A stretch of DNA of 64,000 nucleotides from Hypanus sabinus (GCF_030144855.1 NC_082710.1:183520001-183584000); one strand, 5' to 3'. Counted from the stretch's first letter, positions 32,204 to 56,126 are shown. The notes: a model not told the origin generated them from the letters alone. Numbers and translations: made by a program.

Positions 32204-32230
32204 CTGCATGACTGTACATCCTGTCCCATT
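32204..32230 (-). CDS. BTN-like microexon 10 (27 nt): (E)WDRMYSHA
   Basis: tatttctttttccAG|27 nt|GTaaga; resembles the W-containing pre-PRY exon of BTN/TRIM genes and joins the B30.2 exon as HA-V-VVRPDPNTA. Confidence 0.9.
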
Positions 32231-33289
32231 CTGGAAAAAGAAATAGAAGACATGAAGCACAAAGAATTAAACAGAACAACTAACATCCCACTTCCAAAGA
32301 GCTACAGATCTGTGAGCAATCATAGTTCATCCTAATTTCAGTAAGGTCAAAATTAGGAAAATAGCCAGTTCCCTCATGGTGAGGTTTAAAGTTCAAACTA
32401 CATTTATAATCAAGGTATGCATTTGGCATACAACCCTGAAATTTGTCTCCTCGCAGACAGCCACGAAACAAAGAAACACCATGGAACCCGACCAAACAAA
32501 ACATCAGACACCCAACACAAAAAAAATCATGCAAACGGCAGACAATGGGCAAAAACCACAGAATATAAAACATCAAACCACAGTCACTGAAATAGTCTAG
32601 GAATCTTCATTTAGCTCAGTTCAGTTCAATTTAGCACCGTGTCCACCGTTGAAGAGAGTCTTCAAGATTCAAGATTGTTTAATATCATTTCCAGTACACA
32701 AGTGTAAAGGAGAACAAAATTATTGGTACTCCGCATACAGTGCAGGTGCAGAAACCACACTAGGATAAAGATTATAATAATAGATGCTCTCTGACTTGCT
32801 GAGTTTCTCCATCATATTGCATATAAACCTCAGGATGATGGTCTCAAGATAACGGGCAGGTGGTTTAAGACTGGGAAAGGCCCTCAGACCGTAGGAAATC
32901 TTTGGGAAATCTCTTTCAAGCAAGTCGTGTAATCATAAGTCGGTGGGCTTATGATAGGAGAGACGGGGGTTATGGGGAACATGAATAAGGCCAGGATGAG
33001 AACGATGGGGAATGCAGGGAGGGTGGAATAGATATGAGACAATCTCACTGAAATTATTTTTACATGAAACTCAGGAGCCAGGAAGGCCACTGGAACCCTC
33101 CTGTGTTTGCCAGTCAATGAGATTACACCCCACCCCTTCTTTCCACCTGACTGTTTAATTTACGGTTCACAAATGTAAAGGAGAACAAAATAATTGTTAC
33201 TCCGGTTCCAACACAGCACAAAAAAAACACAACATAAAGAACACAATGACAATACTAAAACAACACAAAGAATACCTGTACATGAAATA

Positions 33290-33790
33290 GCTTAAATACT
33301 GTGCACAGATGATTGTATATAACCATATAACAATTACAGCACAGAAACAGGCCATCTCGGCCCTTCTAGTCCGTGCTGTACGGTTACTCTCACCTAGTCC
33401 CACTGGCCTGCACTCAGCCCATAACCCTCCTTTCCTCTCCTGTCCGTATACCTATCCAATTTTTTTTTTAATGACAATATTGAACCTGCCACTTCTACTG
33501 GAAGCTCATTCCACACAGCTACCATTCTCTGAGTAAAGAAATTCCCCCTCGTGTTACCCCTAAACTTTTGCCCCTTAACTCTCAACTCATGTCTTCTTGT
33601 TTGAATCTCCCCTACTCTCAATGGAAAAAGCCTATCTACATCAACTCTATCTATCCCCCTCATTATTTTAAATACCTCTATCAAGTCCCCCCTCAACCTT
33701 CTATGCTCCAAAGAATAAAGACCTAACTTGTTCAACCTTTCCCTGTAACTTAGGTGCTGAAACCCAGGTAACATTCTAGTAAATCTGAGT
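33290..33790 (-). mobile_element. Young CR1 3' end
   Basis: MLPGFQHLSYRERLNKLGLYSLEHRRLRGDLIEVFK; near-identical to 38090-38580. Confidence 0.88.
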
Positions 33791-34337
33791 TACAGGGTGG
33801 TGAGTGTGTGGAATGAGCTGCCAGCGGGAGTGCTGGATACGGGTTCAATTTCAACATTTAAATGAAATTCGGATAGGTACAGGAATGGGAGGGGCATGGA
33901 ATGCTGTGGTCTGAGTGCAGGTCAGTGAGACTAGTCAGATTAATAGTCTACCATGGACTAGATGGGCCAAAGGGTCTCTTTCTGGGCTGTGGTGCTCTAT
34001 TTATTTTCTATCTTCCTTTCAATTTACTTCCTATTTACTGTGTGAGATGCTCGAAAATACTTTAATGTCACTGGAATCTCCCTCCCCGCTATCTGTGCCA
34101 TTTACTAGGAGTGTTGCAGGCAAAGAACCTGAAGCATTGTTGAGGATCCCCACCACCCGTCCCACAATCTCTCTGACCCATTGCCATCAGGAAGGAGGTA
34201 CAGAGCATCATAACTAGGAATGCCAGACTGCATTGACCAGATGGGCCGAAGGGCCGGTTTCTGTGTTCTTAGACTCTGTGGGTGAGAAATCAGGTTCATA
34301 ATTAATCCTGGCACATTCCTCCACCGGCCTGACGTAC

Positions 34338-34364
34338 CTGATTTGACAAGAGGTCTCCATTGTT
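34338..34364 (-). CDS. BTN-like microexon 9 (27 nt): (E)QWRPLVKS
   Basis: ctcttttcatttcAG|27 nt|GTacgt; phase 1-1. Confidence 0.83.
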
Positions 34365-35439
34365 CTGAAATGAAAAGAGAAAATTAATTCAAACATAAAA
34401 CTTAATTTTTCAATGAAATATTCCCAGTGATACCAAGTTATTTCAAAACCATTATAAAAAAATACACCCTCCACATTCGTCACCATAAATCCTCAATCTA
34501 ACTGGGGGGAAATTTGAAAGCGGTAAACAAAACAATGAGGGGTATAGATAGGGCAAACACAAACAGCTGTTCTCCTCGGAGGTTGGCTGTGGCAATGAAT
34601 AAAGGTCAGAGGTTAAGGGTGAAAGGTGAAATGCTTCAGGGGAAGGTGAGAGGAAATTTCTTCACTCAGAGGCTGGTGAGAGTGCAGAACAAGCTGCCAG
34701 CGCAAGTGGTGGATGTGATTTCAAATTCGGCGTCTAAGAGAAGTTTGGATAGGTACATGGATGGGAGGAGTATAGGTCCAGGTGCAGGTTAAAGTTCAAA
34801 TTTCAAAGTCAATTTTAATACGTATGTCGCCATACACAACCCTGAGATTCATTTTCTTGTAGGCATACTCAATAAATCTATAGAATAGTAACCATAACAG
34901 AATCAACAAAAAACTGCCTGACTTGGGCATTCAACCAGAGTGCAGAAAACAACAAACTGTGTAGATACAAAAATAAAAATTAATTATACTAAACAAATAA
35001 GCAATAAGTATTGAGAATGTAACACGCAGAGTCTTTGAAAGTGAGTTCATCGGTTGTCGGAACACTTCAATGACTTTGTAAGTGAAGTGGAATTAACCCC
35101 TTTTGAGACTAGGCAGTTTAAATGGTTCAGCACATATTAGATGGGCTGAAAGGCCCCTTTCCATCCTGTAGTTTTCTATGACTCTAACATTGCCCAGTTA
35201 ATTTTGCCATGACATCTTAGTGGATTTGAATCACACCAATTAGTGTAACACTTTACAGCACCAGAAATGAGCAACCAGGGTTCAATTCCCGCAGCTGTTA
35301 CGATTTTTTTCTGTAGTCCTGTGGCCGTGTGGGTCTCCTCTGGGTGCTCTGGTTTACTCCCAGCATGGAATACCTTTACAGCAGGCACTGTTGCAGGAAG
35401 GCAGCATCCATTATTAATTGGACTTCGAGCTCCCCACCA

Positions 35440-36150
35440 CTGAGCACACCTCCACAGAGCAGCATCCATCACCAAGGACACTGCTGCCATCAGGCAGGAG
35501 GTACAGGAGCCTCAGGGCTCACACCACCAGGTTCAGGGAGAGTTATTACCCCTCGACCAGCAGGAACCACCATCCAGGACACGCTCTCGTCTCACTGCTG
35601 CCACCATCAGGCAGGAGGTACAGGAGCCTCAGGACCCACACCACCAGGTTCAGGGAGAGTTATTACCCCTCGACCAGCAGGAACCACCATCCAGGACACG
35701 CTCTCGTCTCACTGCTGCCACCATCAAGCAGGAGGTACAGGAGCCTCAGGGCCCACACCACCAGGTTCAGAAACAGTTATTACCCCTCAGTCAGCAGGAA
35801 TCCCCACCACCCAGGCCATGCTCTCGTCTCACTACTGCCACCATCAGGCAGGAGGTACAGGAGCCTCAGGACCCACACCACCAGGTTCAGGGAGAGTTAT
35901 TACCCCTCGACCAGAAGGAACCACCATCCAGGACACGCTCTCGTCTCACTGCTGCCACCATCAAGCAGGAGGTACAGGAGCCTCAGGGCTCACACCACCA
36001 GGTTCAGGAACAGTTATTACCCCTCAGTCAGCAGGAAGCACCACCCAGGCCACGCAGTTGTCTCACTGCTGCCACCATCAGGCAGGAGGTACAGGAGCCT
36101 CAGGACTCTCACCACCAGGTTCAGGAACAGTTATTACCCCCTCAACTATT
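35440..36150 (+). repeat. Six tandem 117-bp (one 120-bp) copies of a LINE ORF2 C-terminal segment
   Basis: CA(G/A)GCAGGAGGTACAGG anchors at 35491, 35608, 35725, 35845, 35962 and 36079; peptide HHPGHALVSLLPPSGRRYRSLRTHTTRFRNSYYP. Confidence 0.92.
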
Positions 36151-36619
36151 AGGCTCCTGAACCAGAGGGGATAACCTCACCCACCCCATCACTGAGCTGT
36201 TCTCACAACCTATTGACTCACTATCAAGGACTCTGCATCTCATGTTCTCGATATTTATTGTTTATTTGTTTATTATTTGCACAGTTTGTTGTCTTTTGCA
36301 CGTTAGTTGGTTGTCCATTCTGTTGGGTGCGATCATTCACTGATTCTATTGTGTTCTTGGATTTATTGAGTATGCCCACAAGGAAATGAACCTCAGGGTT
36401 GTATATGGTGACATATATGTACTTTGATAATAAATTTACTTTGAACTCAAAGCTTTGGGCATGCAAATTGGCACCAGAAGCATGAAGACGCTTGTGGACT
36501 GCCCTAACACAATCCATGGACTGCACTGGATGATATTGATAAATGGCAGATTTCACTGGAATATGCGATGTAGAGTTCATCTTTAATTAACTTTTACTCA
36601 CTTGCTAGCACCCACTGGA

Positions 36620-37010
36620 ATTCAGAAGAATGAGGAGTGACCTCATTGAAACCTATCGAATGTTGAAAGGCCTCAATAGGGTGGATGAAGAGAGAATATT
36701 TCCTATGGTGGGAGAGTCTAAGACCAGAGGACACAACCTCAGAATAGAGGGAGACATCCACTTAGAACAGATGGAGAAGAATTTCTTTGGCTAGAGTGGT
36801 GAATCTGTGAAATTTACTGCCACCAACGACTGTGGAGTCATTGGGTATATTTAAAGCAGATATTTAAAGTATATTTAATTCATTTGTCAGGGCATGAAGG
36901 GATATGGAGAGAAGACAGGAGATTGGGGCTGATAGGCATGATGAAATGGCAGAACAGGCTTGATGGGCCAAATGGCCTAATTCTACTCCTACATCTTATG
37001 GTCTTATGCT
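36620..37010 (+). mobile_element. CR1 3' end
   Basis: Typical C-terminus and 3'UTR; similar pieces at about 37240-37660, 39960-40670, 46250-46690. Confidence 0.75.
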
Positions 37011-37882
37011 TTTACATGCTCTGGCCATCAATTGGCTCTATGGAAGTTAAAGGACAGATAATATTTCAGGCCCATTTTCTTCTGTAGATGCTGCCTGACC
37101 TGCTGAGTTCCACCAATGCTTTGTGTGTGTGGCTCATGATTCCAGTACCAGTGGTTTCTCGTGCCTGCAGTCGGCTCTACACAGTGCTCTTCGAAAATCT
37201 ATTAATCTGCTTTACCTAAACAGATGTAGGTTAATGAGCTTGGGTTTTCCTCCTTGGAGTGAAGGAGGACGAGAGGGGACTTGAAAGAGGTGTACAGTTT
37301 GGTAAGAGGCATCGAAAGAGGGGACAGCCAGAGACTCTATCCCAGTGTGCAAATGGCTAATACGAGGGGGCATAATTGTAAGGTGTTTGGGGGGGGGAGG
37401 GGGTAAGATGTCAGAGGCAGAGAGAGTTCTGTATACATGAAAATCCCTGCCGGGGTGGTGAAGGCAGATACATTAGGGACATTGAAGGGGCTCTTAGACA
37501 GGCACATGTGTGGGAGGGAAAGACCAAATAAGGGCTTCCTAACTTTTATACGCCATGGATCCCGACCATTACCTGAGTGGGTCTGTGGACGGCAAGTCTA
37601 GATTGATCTTGCAGTGGGGTTAAGAGGTCAGCACAGCGTCGTAGGACTGTGCTGTGATGTGGTATTGAGATTAGAGGATTTGCCAGCCACCTTACTGAAG
37701 AATGAACTGCATGGAAAACCTAAAAAGGCTGGAGTGACGTCTCCGAACCAAATCCCAGCACGGGTGCCTTGAATGGCGCAGAACGGCCACACAAACACTC
37801 GGCCAACAGCAACAAGCAAGGCCGCAGAATACAACCCAACCTTATGCCGAGCAGGAGCCAGACCAACGAACTGAACACTTAC

Positions 37883-37909
37883 CAAACTCAGTCTGGAGCT
37901 TCTTGTAAT
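37883..37909 (-). CDS. BTN-like microexon 8 (27 nt): (N)YKKLQTEF
   Basis: ttgtttcctttgcAG|27 nt|GTaagt; phase 1-1. Confidence 0.87.
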
Positions 37910-38089
37910 CTGCAAAGGAAACAATCATTAGGAAAAAGGTCATCAATCTGTTTACAAAGAGTGTTGATCAACGGGGGGAGAATGAGGAAAACACAGAGCA
38001 CTACAGACAGAAGTGATCACACCACCTGCACGATGCTTGGTCAACTGGATAAGCAAATCTGCCGATGACACTAAGATTGGGGACGTAAT

Positions 38090-38872
38090 ATAACATATAA
38101 CAATCACAGCACGGAAACAGGCCATCTCGGCCCTCCTAGTCCGTGCCGAACTCTTAATCTCACCTAGTCCCACCTACCCGCACTCAGCCCATAACCCTCC
38201 ACTCCTTTCCTGTCCATATACCTATCCAATTTTACCTTAAATGACACAACTGAACTGGCCTCTACTACTTCTACAGGAAGCTCATTCCACACAGCTATCA
38301 CTCTCTGAGGAAAGAAATACCCCCTCGTGTTTCCCTTAAACTTCTGCCCCCTAACTCTCAAATCATGTCCTCTCGTTTGAATCTCCCCTACTCTCAATGG
38401 AAACAGCCTATTCACGTCAACTCTATCTATCCCTCTCAAAATTTTGAATACCTCTATCAAATCCCCCCTCAACCTTCTACGCTCCAATGAATAGAGACCT
38501 AACTTGTTCAACCTTTCTCTGTAACTTAAGTGCTGAAACCCAGGTAACATCCTAGTAAATTGTCTCTGCACTTTCTCTAATTTATTGATATCTTTCCTAT
38601 AATTCAGTGACTAGAACTGCACACAATATTCCAAATTTGGCCTTACCAATGCCTTGTACAATTTTAACATTACATTCCAACTTCTGTACTCAATGCTTTG
38701 ATTTATAAAGGCCAGCATAACAAAAGCCTTCTTCACCACCCTATCTACATGAGACTCCACCTTCAGGGAACTATGCACTGTTATTCCTAGATCTCTCTGT
38801 TCCTCTGCATTCCTCAATGCCCCACCATTTACGCTGTATGTTCTATTTGGATTATTCCTGCCAAAATGTAGA
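38090..38872 (-). mobile_element. Young CR1 3' end
   Basis: LYKALVRPNLEYCVQF, QRQFTRMLPGFQHLSYRERL, open C-terminus. Confidence 0.88.
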
Positions 38873-39084
38873 CAAAATGGACAGAGAGGAAGGCTATCTG
38901 CACGATGCGTGGTCAACTGGATAAATCTGCCAATGACACTAAGATTGGGGACAAAATGGACAGAGAGGAAGGCTATCTGGACCAGCTGGGAAAATGGGCT
39001 GAAAAATAAATACGTTGTGAAATTTACTGTTTCGCTGTAGCAGTACCGAGCAATCTGTTCCTTAAGGGGAGCTCCCACTGCCTG

Positions 39085-39350
39085 TTGGGTGGTACGGCAG
39101 TGTAGTCATCAGCACAACACTTTATAGTACCGGTGACCCAGGATCAATTCCCGCTACTGCCTGTAAGGAGTTTGTACGTTTTCCCCATCACTGTTTCTCT
39201 GGGTGCTCCAGTTTCCTCCCACAGTCCAAAGATGCACCAGTTGGTCGGTTAATTGGTCATCGTAAACTGTCCCATGGTTAGGCTAGGGGTTGCTGGGTGG
39301 CATGGACTCAAAGGGCCAGAAGGGCCAATTCCCCTCTGTATCTCAATACA
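39085..39350 (+). mobile_element. V-SINE / HE1-type tRNA-derived SINE
   Basis: tRNA-like head, then aaggagtttgtacgtt...gggtgctccagtttcctcccacagtccaaag..ggttaattggtc core. Confidence 0.75.
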
Positions 39351-39833
39351 TGAATCAATAGATAGCTAGATAAATAAATCAATTAATCCATAAATAAATA
39401 ATATTAACTGCTCCCAAAGCCATGCATCTGAAATAGCCTCTGACATCCAAGTCACTTGTGACGTAGCTACTAAGCCCAGCTGAACTGTTTCCACGGACAT
39501 CGGTGTGTTACTAGCTCCTGAAAACCGGTTGCCTCGGGCAGGACAGGGCTCTTTGGACGAGGTTTCGAGCTGATCTTGGAGAAGGAAACCTCTGATCTCA
39601 AACCTCCCCTGCCTTGCATTTATACCTATTCATGGGGGAGGCTTCAGGAGTGAACCCTGAGGAAAAGTCCGGAGCCGGAGTCCCCAAGCCAATCCTACAC
39701 GGAGGGGAGATCCTCGTGCAGAGATTCTTTAAATGAGGCCCAGCCAGGGTGTCCATCCCACATTCGCCTACAACCTCTCATCGTCGCAAAGCTCCGGACC
39801 GCGTAGTTAACCTGTGAGCAACTCGGCACTTAC

Positions 39834-39860
39834 TAGCTGTGATCGTGCTGCTTTCCTCCT
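39834..39860 (-). CDS. BTN-like microexon 7 (27 nt): (E)EESSTITA
   Basis: ctttttgtgttttacAG|27 nt|GTaagt; phase 1-1. Confidence 0.83.
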
Positions 39861-40813: not shown

Positions 40814-40840
40814 CAAATTTCTTTTTAAGTTTCTCAAGCT
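40814..40840 (-). CDS. BTN-like microexon 6 (27 nt): (E)LEKLKKKF
   Basis: ttctttttgtttgctcAG|27 nt|GTaagt; phase 1-1. Confidence 0.87.
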
Positions 40841-41039
40841 CTGAGCAAACAAAAAGAAAAACAGGAGACAATGTAATGATTGTAACAAACAGACTAGGAT
40901 TAGCTCAAACAACATCACTCATGCAAGAAATTATGCAGAAAAAGTAATGCCTCACTTTCAGCGACTCGAATCTGCAGTTTTTTCTCGTGTTTTTTTTTTA
41001 CTTTTTTTCACTATTTGTGCAATTATTGGCTGTCCCTCT

Positions 41040-41190
41040 ACCTCCTCCCCGCCCACCCCTACCCCCTCCACATCCCCAACCCTCACACCCACAACCCTAA
41101 TCCTAACCCTAACCCCCACCCCTACCCCCTCCACCTCCCCAATCCTAATCCAAACCCCCAGCTCCACCCCAACCACCACCCTCAAGCCCG
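41040..41190. repeat. C-rich low-complexity tract with a 28-bp duplication and CCCTAA-like units
   Basis: cccacccctaccccctccac(a/c)tccccaa twice; aaccctaatcctaaccctaacccc. Confidence 0.7.
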
Positions 41191-41298
41191 GCTCCGACAA
41201 CATTAAGGAACCAACATGATGCCCAGGAACCTGAATGTGGAAACTGCAGAGGGTAACAGATGAGACTACACTGGTGACAGAGTTCTCTACATGCTCAC

Positions 41299-41325
41299 CT
41301 GATTTCTCTGCTCGTACTGCTTCCG
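41299..41325 (-). CDS. BTN-like microexon 5 (27 nt): (A)EAVRAEKS
   Basis: attgtctgtttcAG|27 nt|GTgagc; phase 1-1. Confidence 0.83.
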
Positions 41326-41559: not shown

Positions 41560-43810
41560 GTGAGTGTGTGTCAGTGACTCTTTCTCTGTGTGTGTGTCTC
41601 TCTCTAAGTCCATCTGTGCATCTCTGTCTGCGTGTGTGTCTCCCTCTATGACTGTGTGTCTCTCTCTCTATGACTGTCTCTCTCTCTCTATGACTATGTG
41701 TGTCTCTCTCTCTGTCTGCGTGTGTGTCTCTCTCTCTCTATGACTATGTGTGTCTCTCTCTCTGTCTGCGTGTGTGTGTCTCTCTCTCTATGACTATGTG
41801 TGTCTCTCCCTCTGTCTGCGTGTGTGTGTCTCTCTATGACTGTGTATCTCTCTATCTGCGTGTATCTCTCTATGACTGTGTATCTCTCTCTCTATGACTG
41901 TATCTCTCTCTGCGTGTGTCTCTCTATGACTGTGCATCTCTCTCTCTGTCTGCATGTGTGTGTCTCTCTCTATGACTGTGTATCTCTCTCTCTGTCTGCG
42001 TGTGTGTCTCTCTCTATGACTGTGTATCTCTGTCTGCATGTGTGTCTCTCTCTATGATTGTGTATCTCTCTGTCTGCATGTGTGTGTCTCTCTCTATGAC
42101 TGTGTATCTCTCTGTCTGCGTGTATCTCTCTCTATCTGCGTGTATCTCTCTATGACTGTGTATATCTCTCTCTATGACTGCACCTCTCTCTGTCTGCATG
42201 TGTGTCTCTCTCTATGACTGTGTATCTCTCTCTCTCTGTCTGCGTGTGTCTCTCTCTCTATGACTGTGTATCTCTGTCTGCGTGTGTGTCTCTCTCTATG
42301 ACTGTGTATCTCTCTCTTTCTGTCTGCGTGTGTGTCCCTCTCTATGACTGTGTATCTCTCTCTGTCTGCGTGTGTGTCTCTCTCTACGACTGTGTATCTC
42401 TGTCTGCGTGTGTGTCTCTCTCTATGACTGTGTATCTCTCTGTCTGCATGTGTGTGTCTCTCTCTATGACTGTGTATCTCTCTGTCTGCGTGTGTGTGTG
42501 TGTCTCTCTCTATGACTGTGCATCTCTCTCTCTGTCTGCGTGTGTGTCTCTATGACTGTGCATCTCTCTCTGACTGCGTGTGTCTCTCTCTGACTGTGTG
42601 TCTCTCTCTATGACTGTGTATCTCTCTCTCTGTCTGCGTGTGTGTCTCTCTCTCTATGACTGTGTATCTGTCTGCGTGTGTGTCTCTCTCTGACTGTGTG
42701 TCTCTCTCTATGACTGTGTATCTCTCTCTCTGTCTGCGTGTGTCTCTCTCTCTCTATGACTGTGTATCTCTCTGTCTGCATGTGTGTCTCTCTCTGACTG
42801 TCTCTCTCTATGACTGTGTATCTCTCTCTGTCTGCGTGTGTCTCTCTCTCTATGACTGTGTATCTCTCTGTCTGCGTGTGTGTCTCTCTCTCTATGACTG
42901 TGTGTCTCTCTCTCTGTCTGCGTGTGTGTCTCTCTCTCTGTCTGCGTGTGTGTCTCTCTCTATGACTGTGTATCTGTCTGTATGTGTGTGTCTCTCTCTA
43001 TGACTGTGTATCTGTCTGTATGTGTGTCTCTCTCTCTATGACTGTATCTCTCTCTGTCTGCGTGTGTGTGTCTCTCTCTCTCTCTCTATGACTGTGTATC
43101 TCTCTGTCTGCATGTGTGTGTCTCTCTCTATGACTGTGTATCTCTCTCTGTCTGTGTGTGTCTCTCTCTCTATGACTGTGTATCTCTCTCTCTCTCTCTG
43201 TGTCTCTCTCTCTCTATGACTGTGTATCTCTCTCTGTCTGCGTGTGTGTGTCTCTTTCTCTCTCTATGACTGTGTATCTCTCTGTCTGCGTGTGTGTGTC
43301 TCTCTCTCTCTCTATGACTGTGTATCTCTCTCTGTCTGCGTGTGTGTGTGTCTCTCTCTCTATGACTGTGTATCTCTCTCTGTCTGCGTGTGTGTGTGTC
43401 TCTCTCTCTATGACTGTGTATCTCTCTCTGTCTGCGTGTGTGTGTCTCTCTCTCTATGACTGTGTATCTCTCTCTGTCTGCGTGTGTGTGTGTCTCTCTC
43501 TATGACTGTGTATCTCTCTGTCTGCGTGTGTGTGTGTCTCTCTCTCTATGACTGTGTATCTCTCTCTGCGTGTGTGTGTGTCTCTCTCTCTCTATGACTG
43601 TGTATCTCTCTCTCTCTCTATGACTGTGTATCTCTCTGTCTGCGTGTGTGTGTCTCTCTCTCTCTATGACTGTGTATCTCTCTCTCTGCGTGTGTGTCTC
43701 TCTCTCTCTATGACTGTGTATCTCTCTCTCTGTCTGCGTGTGTGTGTCTCTCTCTCTATGACTGTGTATCTCTCTCTGTGACTGCGTGTGCGTGTCTCTC
43801 TCTCTCTGTC
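41560..43810. repeat. Compound (CT)n/(GT)n-derived minisatellite of roughly 50 variable units of about 40 bp
   Basis: Unit CTATGACTGTGTATC(TC)nTGTCTGCG(TG)n(TC)n. Confidence 0.95.
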
Positions 43811-44488
43811 TGAGCGCCTCTCTGTTGTTCAAGATTTCTAGCATCTGCAGAATCTCGTGTTGGTGTGTCAATGAGCTGCTTGGTTCCGATAGCAGTGAGA
43901 AATAGCTGTTCAAGCCGTGACATCAGGAATTTGATATGAAAAAAGTTCTTATTCTACTTGACGATGGAATAACTTTAATCATCTCGAGGATAAAACAACA
44001 GGTGAGGAAGGGGTTTCCATCTGGATATGTCCGTTTCAAAAATAAAACAAAATAGTAAGAGCCCAATGCTTGCTTTCAATGATTTCCTAACTATCTGTGA
44101 AATATGATCCAAAAATTAATAACCGGTAATGTAGTTTAGAAACACGAGAGATTCTGCAGATGCTGGAAATCCAGAGCAATGCACACAAAATGCTGGAGGG
44201 TCTGAGCAGCTCAGGCTCTATGGAAACGTACAGACAACGTTTCGGGCCAAGTCCATTCATGGCCAGACTTCAGAAGACCCCTATGACTGCTACATACTGA
44301 GAGTTTTGCCTTCCCTGTTACATAACAGTCAGTCAAGGTGCTGTTTGCTTTCGTCTGATAGGCAAACCTCAAACCGTAATCACTGCCCACCAATATTCAA
44401 AACATTGTGCTTTTAGAGAGGAATACAGCCACAGGCTTATGCCATTACCCCATGGCACCATCTTCACAACACAACCCACTGTCCTTAC

Positions 44489-44515
44489 CTTTCTCCCTGC
44501 GCAACTTCTCATACC
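44489..44515 (-). CDS. BTN-like microexon 4 (27 nt): (G)YEKLRREK
   Basis: ttctgttctctttcAG|27 nt|GTaagg; phase 1-1. Confidence 0.87.
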
Positions 44516-47905: not shown

Positions 47906-48628
47906 CTGTTTCCACAATTTCAATGGTTCGGCAGAGACCAGGTGGGCCACAGAGCAGGCTTCTGAGCTGTACTTTTCTATAACCGTGACTCATCATAACA
48001 ATTAAATCTCTGGGTCGGGGGAAGTGTGACACCCCCGATGACGTCAGCTTCTGATGGTTCTGAAGGTGAACCCCGACGGAATACTGACCAAGTGTAACTC
48101 GGCAAAGTTTAGAGAAGCCTGCGTTGTTTCCCCCGGAGCGCTGGAGGCTGACAGGAGACATGTTTATAAGATTATCAGAGGCACAGAGAGAGTAGACAGA
48201 CAATACCTTTTTCCCAGGGTTCAAATGTCTAAGACCAGGGGGTGAGAGGGGCTAATTTCAAAGGAGATACAGAGAGTGGTGGGTGCCTGGGGTGGTGGAG
48301 AGCCAGAAATAGTGGAGACTTCTAAGAGACATATAGATAGGCACATGATTGTGAGGAAAATGGAGGGACACGGACATTGTGTAGGCAGAAGGGCCATTTG
48401 ACTGGTTCAGCACAACACTGTGGGCTGAAGGGCCTCTTCCTGGGTCCTTTGCAAGATTGTCACACACCAGCATCCAATGTTGGTCCCAGTGGAAACGCAG
48501 TGCACTGCAGGGACGTCCTCTCACTCATCGTATCCTCGCTGAACGTACAGGGAGGCATACGGCCTATCTGCCACCAGTATTCACGGCGTCAGAACACTCG
48601 ATCACCATAAATTGATCCCGAGACTCAC

Positions 48629-48655
48629 CTTCTTCCGCTACCAGCTTCTGTTTCT
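48629..48655 (-). CDS. BTN-like microexon 3 (27 nt): (E)KQKLVAEE
   Basis: ctgtctcttgcAG|27 nt|GTgagt; phase 1-1. Confidence 0.85.
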
Positions 48656-50367
48656 CTGCAAGAGACAGAAATCCCATGTTAGGAACTAGGGCCAATGATA
48701 AAGAGCAGGCTGTTCCCACTGTGGACCTGTACGGTGTCAGATAGATCTCTGGTGAACCAGTACCTGCCCTCCATTTTAAGATTCGTCCCCCTTGTTTTGC
48801 CTCTCAACTGGAGGAAATGCATCACCTTCCCAAATTCATTCACAAATAATGGAACATTCCAGCACAGTTCAGGCCCTGGTTTTGTGACCTCTGACGGCTG
48901 GGTCACCAGTCTTGTAAAGACACTGCAGCAACGGCAAACCGCTTCTGTAGAAACATACGCCAAGAACAACCATGGTCACGAGTAGAGCAACAGCAGGAAG
49001 TGGGTCCTCCCCACAGGCAACGAGCCCTTGCTCGGTAGACAGATGGAAGACCGTGATCTGAACCCTAACCCTAATGCATGATCACACAACACACGATGAT
49101 GCTACTGATACCACCTTCAACCCACAATGTTGCGCCAAAATTTTAACCTGCTCTAAGATCACTGTAACCCCTCCCACCCACGCATTAGGGTAAGGGGTAG
49201 GGTAGCCCTCCATTTTTCTATCATCCATGTGCTTATCTAAAACTCTCTTAAATTTCCCTAATGTCCCTGGCAGCACGTTATACACACCCAGCACTCCATA
49301 AAAAATCTTCCTCTGATACCCACCCCTGCACTTTCCTCCAACCTACTCAAAATTATGCCCCCTCATGTTAGCCACTTCTGCACCTACGACATTTTCTCTA
49401 ATCCAAGCAGCATCCTGGGAGATCTTATGAGGCGACCAGAACTGAACACAATATTCCACCTTCTATAAGAGAATGGCCTTGTCTCTGGATGGGCAGATGC
49501 CACAGTGGTTAATCTAGGCTCAACTGCCGGTCTTCCATAAATAAAAAACCTTGCCCAGGCTTGCGACCTGGAAACTTTCCAAGGTGCAAATCCACGGTCC
49601 ATCAAGACTAACGGAGGCTGAATCAAATGAAGGGCTGGGATGTATTGGGTTTTCTGAACACAGGGACATTATCCAACGGTCAAATGGCGCCACAACACGA
49701 ACCTCTCACTCAGCTAATGAGCGGATCATCAACTACAGGAGGAAGACATCATGATCCAGTCCTCGTCAAGTGGAGAGCTTTAAATTCCTTGGCATTGTCA
49801 CATCCAAGGGTCTGTCTTGGGACCAGCAGGTCAGAGCAATCACAAAGAAGGGTTGACAGCAACCCTACTTTCTTCGAGGTTCACATAGATTTACTATGTC
49901 ATCTAAGACTCTACCTTCTATAGAAGCACAGTGCACAGTTCCCTGACCGGTTGCATTGAGGCCTGGTTTGGAAACACCAATGCCCAGGAATGGAAAAAGT
50001 GGTGGATACAGCCCAGTCCATCACAGGCAACAGCCTCCGTGCCAGAGCACGTCTACAAGGAGCGCTGCCACAAGAAAGCAGCTCCCATCATCACGGGGCC
50101 CACCATCCAGCCATACCGTTTTCTCGCTGCTACCATCGGGCAAAAGGTACAGGAGCCTCAGATCCTACATCACCTGGGTCAGGAACAGTTATTACCATCA
50201 GCTCCCGAACCAGCGAGGATAACTTCACTCATCTCAGTGCTGAACTGCCTCCACAACCCACAGACTCACTTTCACGGACTCTACAACTCGTTCTCAGAAT
50301 TATTCTTCTTAACTTGTACGATGCATCTTCTTTTGCACATTGGCTGTTTGTCAGTCTTTGTTCACGT

Positions 50368-50604
50368 TGTGGCGACCCATTTCCTGGCACACCCGAACTG
50401 GCTCACAATTAGCCAGCGTTCCGGCTAAGGGAGATAGCCTACGGGGGTTTGTGAGTACGTGTCTTTTGGAGCATCCGCGCCCATGGGGGGCGGGTTGAGG
50501 GAGGCTTTAAAGCAAGGCTGTTTAGTTCGAATAAAGTTATCTTTGACTGCAGTTTACCGATTCCCGTGTCGTTATTTTAGCGCTGCGTGTAGCACACCGC
50601 TACA
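50368..50604 (+). mobile_element. Solo LTR (237 bp), Gypsy-like
   Basis: TGTGGCG...CGCTACA termini, internal AATAAA, 4-bp TSD ACGT (50364-50367, 50605-50608). Confidence 0.85.
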
Positions 50605-50859
50605 ACGTAATAAATTCTACTGCATTTTTATTTTCCAGTAAATGCCTACAAGAAAATGAATCTCAGGGTAACCAATCTTGTAGGCATTTACAGGAAAATT
50701 TGTAAATCTCTTTCTCCAAACAAAGATGTGATTTTTCACTTCAGTGTTCCGTTCCTTCCCCAACTTCCTCCGCACCCACCACAAACCTCCAACTCTATAC
50801 CCTCACTCTCACAATCTGATAGGTATAAATTCACAATCTCCTTTACTGCTGGTCCTTAC

Positions 50860-50886
50860 CAAGTTCTTCTTTCAATTCTTCTATCC
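50860..50886 (-). CDS. BTN-like microexon 2 (27 nt): (R)IEELKEEL
   Basis: ttctctttgttacAG|27 nt|GTaagg; phase 1-1, coiled-coil-like peptide. Confidence 0.87.
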
Positions 50887-51280
50887 CTGTAACAAAGAGA
50901 AAGAAAACAAAAATCAATCAGCAGTTTTATTCTTGCCCAGAACCATTATTGGTAGGTGGCACAGTAATTGGACTTTCAGAAGGGCTTTGACCAGTTGCCA
51001 CACACGAGGCTGTTTCACAAGCTACGAGCCTGTGGTATTACAGGAAAGATTCTAACGCGGATAAAGCAGTGGCTGATTGGCAGGATTCAGAGTGGGAATA
51101 AAGGGAGCCTTCTCTGGTTGACTGCCAGTGACTAGTGGTGTTCCACAGCGGTCTGTGTTGGGACCGATTCTTTTTACATTGTATGTCAATACAGAAGACT
51201 AAAGGACAGCCAGACTCAAGCAAGAAGAACAGGAACTTATCGAACCATGGTTCTCTACAGAAGGATCCATCTCCAGACTC

Positions 51281-51400
51281 ACTGACACGGACCTGGTACA
51301 TGAACCCAGACACACTGACACGGACCCGGTACATGAACCCAGACACAGTGACACGGACACGGTACATGAACCCAGACACACCGACACGGACCCGGCATAT
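51281..51400. repeat. 33-bp minisatellite, about 3.6 copies
   Basis: Unit ACTGACACGGACCCGGTACATGAACCCAGACAC starting at 51281, 51314, 51347 and 51380. Confidence 0.9.
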
Positions 51401-51569
51401 TAACCCTTACAGAGAAAAGAGAAACAACAACATCAACAATCAATGAATCGCCAGGATTTGGACCGCGAAGTAAGCACTTCTAACGGACCTCCCTCGAAGC
51501 TAGCCATTCAGAATATTCTGCAGCTAAACTGTTCACAGTGTTTTGAACCAGCCAACTAGACCATGACAT

Positions 51570-51785
51570 ACACGAGGAAATCTGCAGATGCTGGAAATTC
51601 AAACAACACACAAAATGCTGGTGGAACACAGCAGGCCAGGCAGCATCTATAAGGAGAAGCACTGTTGACATTTTGGGCCGAGACTCTGTCCTGACGAAGG
51701 GTCTCGGCCCGAAGCATCGACAGTGCTTCTCTTTATAGATGCTGCCTGGCCTGCTGTGTTCCACCATCATTTTGTGTGTGTTGTT
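51570..51785. mobile_element. 216-bp fold-back element made of two inverted Penelope tails, with TSD
   Basis: About 85-bp inverted arms; flanked by TAGACCATGACAT (51557-51569) and TAGATCATGACAT (51786-51798). Confidence 0.8.
51686..51723 (+). ncRNA. Minimal type I hammerhead ribozyme motif
   Basis: CUGUC-CUGACGA-A-GGGUCUCGGCCC-GAAG-CA-UC-GACAG; stem I compensatory relative to CAGUC/GACUG. Confidence 0.6.
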
Positions 51786-51869
51786 TAGATCATGACATCC
51801 AGTCTTTCGCCATTCGGAGCCCGGAGGAGTATATAAGCCGGCATTCTGAGGAGACAACACCCTCAGCTG

Positions 51870-51911
51870 TGCACTGACGATGGCTTCTCAATTTGAGCCG
51901 AAACCTCTGCA
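51870..51911 (+). ncRNA. Second-family minimal hammerhead motif
   Basis: UGCA-CUGACGA-U-GGCUU(CUCAAUUU)GAGCC-GAAA-CC-UC-UGCA. Confidence 0.5.
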
Positions 51912-52711
51912 AACATTTTGCCAAGCTTGGCTACAAACCAAACTTCCAAATATGTCAATGATTTGGATGACAGAATTTATGGCTTTGAGACTAAGTTTGC
52001 AGAGATAGGTGGAGGGGCAGAAACTTGAAATAGAGAGGCTACAGAAAGAACTTGACCAATTAGGAGAATGGGCAAAAACCGAACAGATGGAATACAGTGT
52101 CGGGCACTTTGGTAGATGAAATGAATGGAGAGAAAATTTTAAAATCCGAGGAGCAAGGGGTCTTGTGGGTACTTGTGTAAGATTCCATAAAGGTTAACTT
52201 GCACGTTGAGTCGGTGGTGAGAAAGTAATTGCAATTTAGCATTCATTTCAAGATGACCAGAATATAAGAGCAAGGATGTAATTTTGAAGCTTTATAAAGC
52301 ACTGTTCAGGCCTCATTTGTAGTATTTGAGCTGATTTGGGACCCTTATATTAGAAGGGATGTGCTGAAACTGGAGAGGATTCAGAGGAGGTCGATGCAAA
52401 TGATTCTGGAATGGATGAGTTACCAAATAAGGACCAGTTGATGACTCTGGACCTATACTCACTGGAATTCCGAAGAATGATGGGGGAATCTCACTGAACC
52501 CTATCGAACGATGAAAGGCCTCAATAGACCAGATTTGGAGAAGAGGGCACAGCCTCAGAACAGCGAGACATCCACTTACAACAAAGATGAGGAAAAATGT
52601 CTCTAGCCAGATGGTTGTACAGGCCAAGTCATCGGGTAAATTTAAGGCAGAGGTTGATGGCATCTTCATTAGTCACAGTGTCAAAGGTCGCAGGGAGAAG
52701 GCAGGTAAATG

Positions 52712-55700
52712 AGTCTAAGTTAATCATATGGGATCCATTTAAAGCATTTCTACGTGGTCAGATCATTTCTTATTCAGCTAAGCTTAAAAAACAGACTAAA
52801 GTAGAATTAGGTAAGATTTCAAAACAAATTAAAGATTTAGATAATATTTATGCAATTTCCCCTAATATTGACTTATTTAAACAAAGGGTGGAACTTCAAT
52901 CACAATATAATTTATTGTTAACTCATCCTATTGAAGGTGACTTGTTTAAGCTAAAAAGTCAATTTTATATGTTTGGAGATAAAAATAACAAACTGCTTGC
53001 ATCTCAATTAAAAACGGCCAGAGCCAAAAGGCAAATTTTGAAAATCCGTAGGAAAGATGGCACCCTGGCTTGGGAGTATGAAGAAGTTAATAAGATTTTT
53101 CAAGATTTTTATACTGAACTTTATAAATTTCAATTTCCAGTGGATTATTCTAAAATGAATGCCTTTTTACGAAAGATTGCTTTTCCTCAAATTTCTGTTG
53201 AGGATCAAAGTACTCTCGTTGCCTAAATTACTGAAGCTTAAATCCATAAAGCTATTTTTTCAATGCAATCCGGTAAGGCCCCTGGACTTGATGGCTATCC
53301 TGTAGAATTCTATAAAAAATTTGGAAAATTGCTTTCTCCGTATATGCTGGAAATGTTTAAAGATGATTTACCCTCTACTTTTTATGAGGCTTCTATTTCT
53401 TTAATTCTTAAAAAGCATAAAGATCCTACTGATTGTGCCTCATACAGTCCTATTTCATTATTGAATGTTGATACTAAGATCCTGTCAAAGATAATAGCCA
53501 ATTGGTTGGAAAATATTTTGGGTTAAATTATTTTTAAAGATCAAACAGGATTTATAAGGGTCGTTAATTCCTTTTCAAATGTTCGGAGATTATTTAATAT
53601 TATATATTCATCTTCTTTTAAAACTCCACAATGCGTCGTCTCTTTGGATGCTGAAAAAGTGTTTGATCGAGTCGAATGGAAATATTCATTTAATGTTTTA
53701 GAGAAATTTTGCTTTGATGTTAATTTTAATAATTGGATTAGAATGATATATAAAACTCCTATTGCTACTGTTATTACTAATAACTGTAGATCCCCTTTTT
53801 TTCAGCTTTCATGGAGAACAAGACAGAGTTGTCCAATAGGTCTTTTGTTATTTAATTTAGTATTAGAACCCCTTGCTAGTGCTCTTCGTGAAGCTAAAGA
53901 TACTCATGGGATTCTTGTGAATGAGACCATTCATAAATTTCTCTTTATGCCGATGATTTACTGATTTACTGGTTTATATATCTAATCCTGAGGAATCTAT
54001 CCCTGCCTTGCTAAAATTATTCAATGAATTTGGGGATTTTTCAGGATATAAAATTAATTTTAATAAAAGTGAACTGTTTCCTTTAAATGAATCTGTTTCT
54101 ATATATGATAATTCTCTTTTCAAAGTTATGGATTCCTTTAGATATCTAGGCATTATAATCACTAAAAAATATAAGGATCTTTATAAAGCTAATTTTGTTC
54201 CCTTGGTAGATTCTATTAAGTATTTATTTAGCAGATGGAACCCACTTACGTTTTCACTCGCTGGCTGCTTCCATACAGTCAAAATGATGATTTTACCACA
54301 TTTTTTAATTTATTTCAGAATATCCCTGTTTTTTTGATCGAGTTGTTTCTATTATCTCATCTTTTATTTGGAATGATAAAAGACCAAGAATTGGTAAATG
54401 TCACTTCCAAAAATTGAAAAAGGACGGAGGTCTTGCTTTGCCTAATTTAAGAATGTATTTCTGGGCTGTTAATGTGCAATATATGCCCTTTTGGTTATAC
54501 TGGGTTGATAAGAACAAGTGGCCAATTTGGGTAGATTTGGAATTGAAAGCTGTGAAACAGTTTTGTTTAACCTCGTTATTGGGAGCTGCTCTACCTATAC
54601 AATTAGCTAAAGTTGCTAATTTAAATTTATACCCTATGATTAAGTATTCTTTACAAATTTGGCTCCAGTTCTGTAATTTTTTTAATCTTAAAAAATTTAA
54701 ACTTTGTAGTTTAATTTATCGAAACTATTTTTTTAAGCCTTCTTTGAGTGATCCAATTTTTTTACTTTGTAAAAATAAAGGTATTAATTCTTTTTTGGAT
54801 ATATTTAAAGAAGACAGTCTTTTGAACAATTAGTTGATAAATACTCTCTTTCATATTCACACTTCTTACAATACCTTCAAGTTAGACATTTCTTACAGAA
54901 ATATTTAAGTAAATTTCCTTGCATATTAGAGGCCGATCTGTTAGATATTATTATGAGTATGAACCCTTTGATGAAGGGTTCCATTGGAAGAATCTATAAT
55001 TTATTATTACAATGGGATAAGCGTCCTTTATTTAAGATTAAACAAGATTGGGAAAAGGAACTTAATTTGACTTTTGTGACGGAGGACTGGACGCGGATTC
55101 TGAAGTTGGTTAACTCTTCTTCGATTTGTGCTAGTCATTCACTGATTCAATTTAAAATTGTACTTCGTTACTATTTGATGGAGAGATTGTCTAAAATCTT
55201 TCCTGATGTTGGTAGTTATTGTGATAGATGTAAAACTGAGACAGCTACACTGACACACATGTTTTGGTCTTGTTCTATACTGGAACAGTTCTGGAAGTCA
55301 GTTTTATCTACAATTTCTAAAGCACTTAAAATTAATTTACAACCTAACAAATTAACTGTGCTCTTTGGAATAATACCTCAAAATATTTGTGGTATTTCTT
55401 TATCTGACCAACATGTTATTGCATTTGTTACATTGATAGCTAGGCGGGTCATTTTGTTGAAATGGAAGGATATGTCGGCTCCCACTCTGTCACAATGGTT
55501 CTCTCAAGTGATGCTATGTCTAAGTTTGGAGAAAATTAGAAGTCGAACCTTCGAACCCATGTTTGATATTGAGAAAAGATGGGGGTCATTTGCTCATTAC
55601 TACCATTTGAGTTAATTGATAGATTTTCTCCACGATCAAATTGTAAATTTTGGTATATTCTTTTTGCTGGCGGTTTGATGTTTATCTTTAGAAGCTTTTT

Positions 55701-55780
55701 GTATGATGCATGGCTCCGGGGTTGAACACTTAATTGGTTTTTTCCCCCCTCACTTTTTTCTTGATTTAGTAGGGGTTTTT
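52712..55780 (+). mobile_element. L1/Tx1-clade LINE, 5'-truncated ORF2 pseudogene
   Basis: WDPFKAFLRGQIISY, GKAPGLDGYPVEFYKKF, SLDAEKVFDRVEW, LYADDL (about 53943-53963), C-terminal CCHC (CDRC...HMFWSC), stop at 55615; many stops and frameshifts. Confidence 0.92.
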
Positions 55781-56099
55781 TGAAAAGATTTGAAAAGAAA
55801 GCTATAATGGAATGGCAGCACAGACTTGATGGGCCAAAGTGCCTAATTCTGCTCCTGTGTCTCACTGTGCCCCGTAGGATGATCGGAGAGAGACTGAATA
55901 GGAACCCGATGGGCAGGGTTTTCAGTACAACGAATGAGCTGCCAACGAAGGTGATGAGGGAGAGACATTAGCAAATGGACGAGTAGGTGAATAGGACAGG
56001 CTTAGATGGACGTGAGGCTGACACGGGCGAACGAGACTGGCTTGGAGCAGTTTGGCTAAGGGCCTGGTTCAGTGCTCTACAAATCAAAGCATTACTTAC

Positions 56100-56126
56100 G
56101 CATAGCACCCGAAGATTTCTTCACGT
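56100..56126 (-). CDS. BTN-like cytoplasmic microexon 1 (27 nt): (N)VKKSSGAM
   Basis: ctttgttcttgcAG|27 nt|GTaagt; phase 1-1, open. Confidence 0.8.

What the first reader, a model, noticed from the sequence alone, without database searches (positions are those of the whole stretch)
32204..56126. Butyrophilin-like gene with ten consecutive 27-nt microexons building a 90-residue cytoplasmic stalk
Seen: between the TM exon and the B30.2 exon there are ten exons, each exactly 27 nt, phase 1-1, each with a polypyrimidine-AG acceptor and a GT donor. They splice into an open frame: NVKKSSGAM-RIEELKEEL-EKQKLVAEE-GYEKLRREK-AEAVRAEKS-ELEKLKKKF-EEESSTITA-NYKKLQTEF-EQWRPLVKS-EWDRMYSHA-V. Established: mammalian BTNs have only a few small (21/27-nt) juxtamembrane exons; chicken BG genes have long tails made of 21-nt heptad exons but no B30.2; the BTN3A/BTN2A1 juxtamembrane coil mediates pairing in gamma-delta T-cell sensing. 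Inference: this is an independently expanded, 9-residue-module stalk ending in B30.2. Any exon can be skipped in frame, so stalk length and helical register could be tuned by alternative splicing. Automated annotation may well miss these exons.
Basis: partly seen in the sequence, partly recalled or inferred. Interest (0 to 1): 0.85.

Follow-up and report, generated by a model that had tools for sequence, protein, structure and literature searches.

The report
Stingray butyrophilin stalk of ten microexons
The ten 27-base exons are real and encode the helical stalk of an already annotated Atlantic stingray butyrophilin gene; the stalk is an old, length-conserved feature of cartilaginous fishes, not a new or hidden invention.

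Summary
Observation confirmed. On the minus strand, ten 27-nt phase 1-1 exons with good splice sites lie between a TM exon and a PRY/SPRY exon. They splice into one open frame.

The spliced product is 100% identical, without gaps, to residues 141-536 of RefSeq XP_059827089.1, "butyrophilin subfamily 3 member A3-like" of Hypanus sabinus. Automated annotation therefore already holds all ten exons.

The array is not a lineage-specific expansion.
- Chimaera, sharks and skate have twelve 9-residue modules.
- Stingrays and mantas have ten, having lost one adjacent pair.
- In the little skate, RNA-seq contigs map to the genome as twelve 27-nt exons, all included.
- Paddlefish BTN1A1-like uses 27/27/30/27-nt exons, and HMMER aligns the distal stalk to the human BTN3A/BTN2A1 juxtamembrane region.

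The possibly new points are these.
- The stalk has an 18-residue, two-exon super-repeat, with hydrophobic period 3.6 rather than 3.5.
- Length differences between species come only in 18-residue blocks.
- No exon-skipped isoform of the long-stalk gene turned up.

Most likely the stalk is a rigid helical pairing spacer holding B30.2 about 12 nm from the membrane; this is inferred. The same scan noted the 18-residue periodicity on this same stretch (s1-178251), and I confirm it.

This is an ordinary family member with a modest comparative twist.

The parts
61751..62035 (-). IgC exon (285 nt, phase 1-1) of the butyrophilin-like gene
   Evidence: Pfam PF22705 'Butyrophilin subfamily 3 member A2-like Ig-C domain', E 3.2e-21. 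Acceptor and donor read. Part of the gapless 100% match to P0168.
57382..57501 (-). Transmembrane exon (120 nt, phase 1-1)
   Evidence: Hydrophobic stretch found, splice sites read. AF2 helix 243-276 of P0168.
56100..56126 (-). Microexon 1 (27 nt): Ser/Gly-rich hinge module
   Evidence: Low-pLDDT non-helical segment 276-284 in the AF2 model.
50860..50886 (-). Microexon 2 (27 nt), A-type module with hydrophobics at positions 2, 5 and 9
48629..48655 (-). Microexon 3 (27 nt), B-type module, mostly charged
44489..44515 (-). Microexon 4 (27 nt), A-type
41299..41325 (-). Microexon 5 (27 nt), B-type
40814..40840 (-). Microexon 6 (27 nt), A-type
39834..39860 (-). Microexon 7 (27 nt), B-type
37910..39833 (-). 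Intron where two ancestral modules (8 and 9 of the 12 in sharks, skate and chimaera) are missing
   Evidence: Family alignment. No recognisable relic above the background of the other introns.
37883..37909 (-). Microexon 8 (27 nt), A-type; corresponds to module 10 of 12
34338..34364 (-). Microexon 9 (27 nt), near-invariant EQW(R/K)PLV module
32204..32230 (-). Microexon 10 (27 nt), EW-R module; its paddlefish counterpart is a cassette exon
27335..27852 (-). B30.2 (PRY/SPRY) exon with stop codon
   Evidence: Pfam PRY E 5.5e-10 and SPRY E 3.5e-19. Best solved relative is human BTN3A1 B30.2, E 2.5e-34.

Best explanation
The window holds the 3' three quarters of the Atlantic stingray (Hypanus sabinus) gene for XP_059827089.1. 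This is a type I membrane protein of the butyrophilin family, with the order IgV-IgC-TM-stalk-B30.2.

Shown:
- The stalk is coded by ten symmetric (phase 1-1) 27-nt exons.
- The first module is a Ser/Gly-rich hinge. Modules 2-10 are predicted as one uninterrupted alpha-helix of about 79 residues, roughly 12 nm long.
- The modules alternate between two types. Type A has large hydrophobic residues at positions 2, 5 and 9. Type B is mostly charged.
- The true repeat is therefore two exons, which is 18 residues or five helical turns. The hydrophobic residues form a nearly straight stripe with period 3.6.
- The array is ancestral. There are twelve modules in chimaera, sharks and skate. One adjacent pair was lost in the stingray/manta lineage.
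- The same 27-nt building block occurs in ray-finned-fish BTNs, and the distal stalk is homologous to the mammalian BTN juxtamembrane region.

Inferred:
- The stripe pairs two chains, as homo- or heterodimers, as proposed for the BTN3A1 juxtamembrane region and chicken BG tails.
- The stalk then acts as a rigid spacer or transmission rod between the membrane and B30.2.
- Its length is constrained to change only by whole 18-residue units, which keep the azimuthal register.
- The purine-rich exons (68% A+G) probably act as their own splicing enhancers and are constitutively included.

The confidence given covers the shown parts (gene identity, exon structure, ancestry, periodicity) at about 0.95 and the inferred pairing-spacer mechanism at about 0.55.
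For: Exon anatomy and statistics.

Identity to RefSeq: 100% over 396 residues with no gaps; accession and species; gene span 46,997 bp.

Domains. Foldseek places the AF2 model end to end (512-533 columns, E about 1e-46) on full-length human BTN3A1/BTN2A1 cryo-EM chains.

AF2 model: helix 283-361, hinge 276-284.

Periodicity:
- The spectral peak is at 3.61 residues. 0 of 2000 permutations reach the observed power at 3.6.
- Power at 3.5 is 2-5 times lower.
- Autocorrelation is highest at lags 18 and 36 and negative at lags 9 and 27.
- 18 of 21 large hydrophobic residues fall within a 120-degree arc at 100 degrees per residue.

Orthologues:
- The alignment is gapless apart from 18-residue blocks.
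- A skate RNA-seq contig maps to the genome as twelve 27-nt exons, and contigs from at least 11 runs encode the same protein.
- The bamboo shark genome holds twelve intact 27-nt exons.
- Paddlefish stalk exons are 27/27/30/27 nt.
- HMMER extends the alignment from B30.2 through the distal stalk into the human BTN3A3, BTN3A1 and BTN2A1 juxtamembrane region, with the EW motif at the same distance from B30.2.

Literature:
- BTN juxtamembrane regions are coded by several very short 'heptad' exons (PMC6790196).
- A coiled-coil juxtamembrane dimer has been proposed for BTN3A1 (PMC7348870, section 3.5).
- Chicken BG tails are made of 21-nt phase-1 exons and are read as coiled coils (PMC5938342).
Against: - No transcript data from Hypanus itself were available here. 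Inclusion of all ten exons rests on the RefSeq model and on the skate orthologue.
- Dimerisation was not tested. Only a monomer could be modelled, and AF2 also predicts a lone long helix for such sequences.
- A period of 3.6 is not that of a canonical left-handed coiled coil. About 48% of the residues are charged, and i/i+4 opposite-charge pairs are mildly enriched (z 2.1). Both features also fit a single stable helix.
- The resolution between periods 3.5 and 3.6 over 90-108 residues is only about one spectral bin.
- The ten-module count in the electric ray Narcine, which lacks a different pair, was not checked against genomic DNA.
Confidence: 0.7

Rival explanations
1. The stalk is an independently expanded 9-residue-module array. 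Its length and helical register are tuned by skipping any of the symmetric microexons.
For: - All ten exons are phase 1-1, so any subset can be skipped in frame.
- RefSeq isoforms of paddlefish BTN1A1-like differ by exactly the last 9-residue module. Worm-lizard BTN3A1-like isoforms differ by 7- and 10-residue stalk units.
- Macaque BTN3A transcripts lacking one 'heptad' exon are reported (PMC6790196).
Against: - Twelve modules are conserved, in a gapless alignment, from chimaera to sharks and skate, so the array was not expanded in this lineage.
- Skate RNA-seq contigs from at least 11 runs all carry all twelve exons.
- The 90% clusters of the Hypanus/Hemitrygon, Mobula and skate proteins contain no isoform shorter by 9 or 18 residues.
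- Differences between species come only in 18-residue pairs.
- Distal modules are homologous to ray-finned-fish and mammalian stalks.
Confidence: 0.12
2. The stalk is a single stable alpha-helix (an ER/K-type SAH domain). It would act as a monomeric rigid spacer rather than as a pairing interface.
For: - 47% of the 81 helical residues are Glu, Lys or Arg.
- Opposite charges at i/i+4 are enriched (14 observed against 9.1 expected, z 2.1).
- The B-type modules have almost no large hydrophobic residues.
- AF2 predicts one long helix in a monomer, with pLDDT about 71-91.
- A period of 3.6 is that of an undistorted helix.
Against: - 26% of the residues are large hydrophobics. They are conserved in position across about 400 million years of divergence (the age is from general knowledge) and are confined to one face. 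An SAH does not need this.
- BTN-family proteins act as dimers, and coiled-coil pairing of the juxtamembrane region has been proposed for them (PMC7348870, PMC5938342).
Confidence: 0.18
3. The straight amphipathic helix lies on the inner membrane leaflet or on a lipid surface. It would resemble apolipoprotein or perilipin repeats, and would fit the lipid-droplet role of mammalian BTN1A1.
For: A straight hydrophobic stripe runs along about 80 residues. BTN1A1 is implicated in milk lipid droplet secretion (PMC8664049 abstract).
Against: - No 11-residue repeat is seen; the autocorrelation at lag 11 (0.17-0.27) is lower than at lag 18.
- The helix is strongly acidic overall (20 Asp/Glu against 19 Lys/Arg), with no basic flank around the stripe.
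- No experimental hint exists.
Confidence: 0.04
4. The ten 27-nt segments are chance AG...GT matches or dead pseudo-exons.
For: None beyond the general difficulty of recognising microexons.
Against: - Exactly ten candidates of 27 nt are found, against 1-4 for other sizes.
- The frame is open through all the joins.
- The product is identical to a RefSeq protein.
- Orthologous exons are spliced into skate mRNA.
Confidence: 0.01

Closest known systems
RefSeq XP_059827089.1 / XP_059827090.1, 'butyrophilin subfamily 3 member A3-like' [Hypanus sabinus]
   Same: It is the same gene. The match is 100% identical and gapless over all 396 residues coded in the window, including all ten microexons.
   Different: Nothing differs in sequence. 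The database name is automatic: the key phosphoantigen residue of BTN3A1 (His351) is Ala here, so 'BTN3A3-like' should not be read as orthology or shared ligand.
Human BTN3A1 / BTN3A3 / BTN2A1 (B30.2 crystal structures and full-length cryo-EM complexes, e.g. 8zjx, 8za9, 9j5j)
   Same: - Same domain order, aligned end to end by Foldseek.
- B30.2 match at E about 1e-34.
- The distal stalk aligns to their juxtamembrane region, with the EW motif at the same spacing from B30.2.
- Their juxtamembrane region is coded by several very short exons (PMC6790196).
   Different: - From the alignment coordinates, the mammalian juxtamembrane region is about 70 residues. It is 99 in the stingray and about 117 in sharks.
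- Macaque BTN3A genes have 3-4 such 'heptad' exons (PMC6790196); this gene has ten 27-nt exons and shark, skate and chimaera orthologues have twelve modules.
- The phosphoantigen residues W350-H351-Y352 are S-A-L here.
Chicken BG genes
   Same: BG genes have a long cytoplasmic helical tail coded by a long run of tiny symmetric exons with a split first codon, which is the same phase (PMC5938342). They belong to the BTN family.
   Different: BG genes have 27-37 exons of 21 nt (true heptads), a single IgV domain and no B30.2, and the exon number varies strongly between genes and haplotypes. Here the exons are 27 nt, the repeat is 18 residues, B30.2 is present, and the number is conserved.
BTN1A1-like genes of early ray-finned fishes (paddlefish XP_041090920.1, sturgeon, gar, reedfish)
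   Same: Paddlefish stalk exons are 27/27/30/27 nt in phase 1. The last module, of the SEW-x-x-I type, is shared with the stingray.
   Different: These genes have only four modules, giving stalks of 35-45 residues. In paddlefish RefSeq isoforms the last module is a cassette exon.
Short-stalk tandem paralogue of cartilaginous fishes (e.g. skate XP_055486588.1, 527 aa)
   Same: Same architecture. It lies directly upstream in the same orientation, judging from read-through gene models in Amblyraja, Narcine and Carcharodon.
   Different: Its stalk is only about 59 residues and is about 29% identical overall.

Membership tests
Butyrophilin (BTN/BTNL) family | Extracellular IgV domain followed by a BTN-type IgC domain | tested here: met
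   The IgC exon hits PF22705 at E 3.2e-21. The IgV exon is outside the window but is present in the identical RefSeq protein, which carries a precomputed V-set Pfam hit.
Butyrophilin (BTN/BTNL) family | Single transmembrane helix followed by a juxtamembrane region coded by very short symmetric exons | tested here: met
   TM exon 57501-57382 and ten 27-nt phase 1-1 exons.
Butyrophilin (BTN/BTNL) family | C-terminal cytoplasmic B30.2 (PRY/SPRY) domain | tested here: met
   PRY E 5.5e-10 and SPRY E 3.5e-19. The best PDB relatives are BTN3A1, BTN3A3 and BTN2A.
BTN3A1-type phosphoantigen sensor | His351 (with W350 and Y352) in the B30.2 pocket; Arg at 351 in BTN3A3 abolishes sensing (PMC7348870) | tested here: not met
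   In the HMMER alignment the motif after PERF reads D-S-A-L. Ala therefore stands at the His351 position and Ser at W350.
Chicken BG-type genes | Many 21-nt heptad exons and no B30.2 domain | tested here: not met
   The exons are 27 nt and a B30.2 exon is present.
Canonical heptad coiled coil | Hydrophobic a/d pattern with period 3.5 | tested here: not met
   The peak is at 3.61. Power at 3.5 is 2-5 times lower, and the strongest autocorrelation is at lag 18, not at 7 or 14.
Dimeric helical stalk (any periodicity) | Two chains pair through the stalk | not testable with these tools
   Only monomer prediction was available. The conserved one-sided hydrophobic stripe is compatible with pairing but is not proof.

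The most novel reading that the evidence does not exclude
The cartilaginous-fish BTN stalk is a non-heptad, 18-residue-periodic (3.6 residues per turn), essentially straight two-helix rod. Its length has been held at twelve modules since the chimaera-elasmobranch split. It can change only by five-turn quanta, that is by two-exon units. It would then be a register-preserving molecular ruler that couples the B30.2 domain to the ectodomain, an ancestral form of the inside-out signalling described for BTN3A1.
Probability: 0.25. Interest if true: 0.55.

Novelty: new member of a known kind. Interest (0 to 1): 0.3.

Why it matters
The juxtamembrane region of mammalian BTN3A1/BTN2A1 is known to control gamma-delta T-cell activation, but how it does so is still debated. 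A version of the same region in cartilaginous fishes could help with that question, for three reasons:
- It is longer and cleanly modular, with one exon per nine residues and two exons per five helical turns.
- Its length is fixed across very deep time.
- It therefore offers a natural series (12, 10 and 4 modules) for testing whether stalk length and register matter.

For genome annotation, the case shows that current RefSeq models recover such 27-nt exons, while an older annotation lost a third of them.

Beyond that, this is an ordinary, already annotated member of a known family.

Tried and rejected
1. A homology search with the skate stalk alone (residues 266-385) found only its own cluster. 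It says nothing about stalks outside cartilaginous fishes.
2. I searched for relics of the two lost modules in intron 39833-37910. The best 8-mer scores (19 and 17) are below the background of the other introns (24 and 24).
3. In-register DNA identity among the ten exons is at most 16 of 27. There is no sign of recent duplication.
4. Genomic DNA for Hypanus itself and for Heterodontus could not be fetched, because the file was too large or the gene range too long.
5. Literature searches for shark BTN microexons, or for 27-bp BTN exons, found no paper describing the array. PMC12841164 lists H. sabinus BTNs and only remarks that the number of heptads varies.
6. Pfam found nothing in the hAT-like ORFs at 12076-13593.
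7. I considered reading the 527-aa skate cluster members as splice isoforms and rejected it. They are a paralogue with about 29% identity.


Full report
**1. The observation**

Each sits in a 27-nt segment that follows a pyrimidine tract plus AG and precedes a GT(A/G)AG-type donor.

With simple acceptor and donor scores, all ten pass (acceptor 4.2-10.8, donor 3.9-12.2). I then scanned both strands of the whole window for AG...GT segments of 15-57 nt at thresholds that just admit the ten. The minus strand gave exactly ten candidates of 27 nt, which are the claimed ones. Every other size gave 1-4 candidates, and the plus strand gave two of 27 nt. No further plausible microexon lies between them.

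The upstream exons are an IgC exon (62035-61751) and a TM exon (57501-57382). The downstream exon is a PRY/SPRY exon (27852-27335, with stop). All junctions are phase 1, and the thirteen exons join into one open frame of 396 codons.

**2. What the gene is**

Pfam finds the butyrophilin-type IgC domain (PF22705, E 3.2e-21) and PRY plus SPRY.

A search of the B30.2 exon against 1.84 billion representatives, followed by cluster look-ups, led to RefSeq XP_059827089.1/XP_059827090.1, 'butyrophilin subfamily 3 member A3-like' of Hypanus sabinus. My spliced model is 100% identical to its residues 141-536, with no gap. So the window comes from the Atlantic stingray, and NCBI's annotation already contains all ten microexons.

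The gene spans 46,997 bp in GCA_030144855.1. Its leader and IgV exons lie beyond the window end, and tblastn finds no IgV exon in the window.

An AlphaFold2 model of the full protein (mean pLDDT 83.6) aligns end to end with full-length human BTN3A1 and BTN2A1 chains from cryo-EM complexes (512-533 columns, E about 1e-46).

The name 'BTN3A3-like' is automatic. At the position of His351, the key phosphoantigen residue of BTN3A1 (PMC7348870), the stingray has Ala. W350 and Y352 are Ser and Leu (alignment).

**3. The array in other species**

| Species group | Modules in the stalk | Evidence |
|---|---|---|
| Hemitrygon (91% identical), two Mobula species (70%) | 10, aligned gaplessly with the window | |
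| Little skate, four sharks, chimaera Callorhinchus | 12 | |
| Electric ray Narcine (RefSeq model) | 10, lacking a different adjacent pair |, not checked on DNA |

The whole family alignment has no gaps in the stalk other than blocks of 18 residues. The stingray and manta lineage lacks modules 8 and 9 of the twelve. The corresponding intron in the window (39833-37910) shows no recognisable relic.

For the little skate I fetched both the genomic locus and RNA-seq-assembled contigs. One 1.9-kb contig maps onto the genome as 5'UTR, leader, IgV, IgC (284 nt), TM (120 nt), twelve blocks of exactly 27 nt, and the B30.2 exon. Contigs from at least eleven sequencing runs encode the same 553-residue protein. 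This is transcript-level proof, in an orthologue, that the microexons are all spliced in.

In the brownbanded bamboo shark genome, all twelve 27-nt exons are intact with AG/GT borders. The older deposited annotation (517 aa) lacks four of them. The newer RefSeq model (553 aa) has all twelve.

**4. Relation to other vertebrate butyrophilins**

Among the best B30.2 relatives that have a TM segment, the non-cartilaginous ones are BTN1A1-like proteins of sturgeon, paddlefish, gar and reedfish. Their stalks are 35-45 residues and end in the same SEW-x-x-I...A(V) motif.

Mapping the paddlefish protein onto its locus gives stalk exons of 27, 27, 30 and 27 nt in phase 1. Its RefSeq isoforms X1 and X2 differ by exactly the last module.

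HMMER extends the alignment of the stingray stalk plus B30.2 into the juxtamembrane region of human BTN3A3, BTN3A1 and BTN2A1. It does so without gaps over the last three to four modules, with the EW pair in register.

The 27-nt phase-1 microexon, and at least the distal stalk, are therefore family features older than the split between cartilaginous and bony fishes. Cartilaginous fishes differ in number (12 or 10 modules, against 4 in paddlefish). Macaque BTN3A genes have 3-4 'heptad' exons (PMC6790196). Chicken BG genes have 27-37 exons of 21 nt and no B30.2 (PMC5938342, PMC4046983).

The mammalian juxtamembrane region is about 70 residues by the alignment coordinates. The stingray stalk (99 residues between TM and B30.2) is therefore longer, but not dramatically so.

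**5. Internal structure of the stalk**

Per-column analysis of the family shows two alternating module types. Even-numbered modules carry large hydrophobic residues at positions 2, 5 and 9. Odd-numbered modules are mostly charged, with at most one central hydrophobic residue.

The hydrophobicity spectrum has these properties:
- It peaks at 3.61 residues in the 12-module species, in the 10-module species and in the window's own sequence alone.
- 0 of 2000 column permutations reach the observed power at 3.6. For the maximum over periods 3.0-4.2 the permutation p is at most 0.003.
- Power at 3.5 is two to five times lower.
- The secondary peaks (2.25 and 3.0) are also harmonics of 18.
- Autocorrelation is highest at lags 18 and 36 and negative at lags 9 and 27.

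In the window's 81-residue helix, 18 of 21 large hydrophobic residues fall in a 120-degree arc at 100 degrees per residue. The real unit is thus two exons, which is 18 residues or five turns.

AF2 predicts the first module (Ser/Gly-rich) as a low-confidence hinge (residues 276-284). It predicts modules 2-10 as one helix (283-361) running into B30.2.

The exons are 68% purine, against 50% for the strand as a whole. This would suit exonic splicing enhancers, but that is an inference.

**6. Mechanism**

Shown: the gene structure, its identity, its conservation, the helical prediction and the 18-residue periodicity.

Inferred: the one-sided hydrophobic stripe pairs two chains, as proposed for the BTN3A1 juxtamembrane region (PMC7348870, section 3.5) and for chicken BG tails (PMC5938342). 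This would give a nearly straight rod that holds B30.2 about 12 nm from the membrane. That every verified length difference is an 18-residue pair suggests a constraint on azimuthal register.

The main structural rival is a monomeric charged single alpha-helix. In its favour, 47% of the residues are Glu, Lys or Arg, and i/i+4 salt-bridge pairs are enriched with z 2.1. The conserved hydrophobic face argues against it.

But no skipped isoform of the long-stalk gene appears in the skate contigs or in the protein clusters, and the module number is conserved.

**7. Novelty**

The gene and its exons are already in RefSeq, and the family and its microexon-coded juxtamembrane region are well known. I found no paper describing the 27-nt array, its conservation in cartilaginous fishes or its 18-residue periodicity. 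The library covers open-access papers only.

I rate this a new member of a known kind, with a modest comparative point of interest.

Noticed in passing
L008 (Chiloscyllium punctatum BEZZ01001158.1) 12671-12697, 12989-13015, 17703-17729, 18742-18768: Four intact 27-nt stalk exons with good splice sites are absent from the older deposited protein chiPu_0016834 (517 aa). They are present in the newer RefSeq model (553 aa). They are missing as two adjacent pairs. This is either an annotation miss or, less likely, a pair-skipped isoform.
   Followed up: partly
P0005 (Narcine bancroftii XP_069771711.1), stalk region: The electric-ray model has ten modules but lacks a different adjacent pair (about modules 4-5) than the stingrays do. 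This was not checked against genomic DNA.
   Followed up: no
P0170 (Amblyraja radiata), P0005 (Narcine), P0194 (Carcharodon): These are read-through gene models that fuse a short-stalk BTN paralogue to the long-stalk one. They imply a conserved head-to-tail tandem pair, which fits the scan's note of a second BTN-like gene just beyond this window's end.
   Followed up: partly
window 52597-55615 (+): Several ORF pieces of a LINE-type retrotransposon (RVT_1 hit at 53644-53961, E 3.5e-07) lie inside the 5.2-kb intron between microexons 1 and 2, antisense to the gene.
   Followed up: partly
window 41574-43823: A 2.2-kb imperfect (TC)/(TG)-rich tandem array, with period about 20-24 and about 100 copies, fills most of the intron between microexons 4 and 5.
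   Followed up: no
window 35487-36140: A tandem repeat of 117 nt (5.6 copies, 90% matches) lies in the intron between microexons 8 and 9.
   Followed up: no
window 21733-23019: A tandem array of a 31-nt GC-rich unit (41.5 copies, 88% matches) lies about 4 kb downstream of the gene's stop codon. It gives a spurious 408-codon ORF.
   Followed up: no
window 12076-13593 (+): Three consecutive ORFs (94, 202 and 196 aa) look like pieces of a transposase-derived gene of hAT type, judged by eye. Pfam gave no hit.
   Followed up: partly
L009 (Polyodon spathula CM030285.1) 16078-18472: The paddlefish BTN1A1-like model carries three consecutive B30.2 exons, and several other top hits have 2-8 B30.2 stretches. 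These are either tandem B30.2 exon duplication or fused gene models.
   Followed up: no
window 14362-14847 (-): A reverse-transcriptase fragment (RVT_1, E 3.3e-11) lies in the TE-rich region downstream of the gene.
   Followed up: partly
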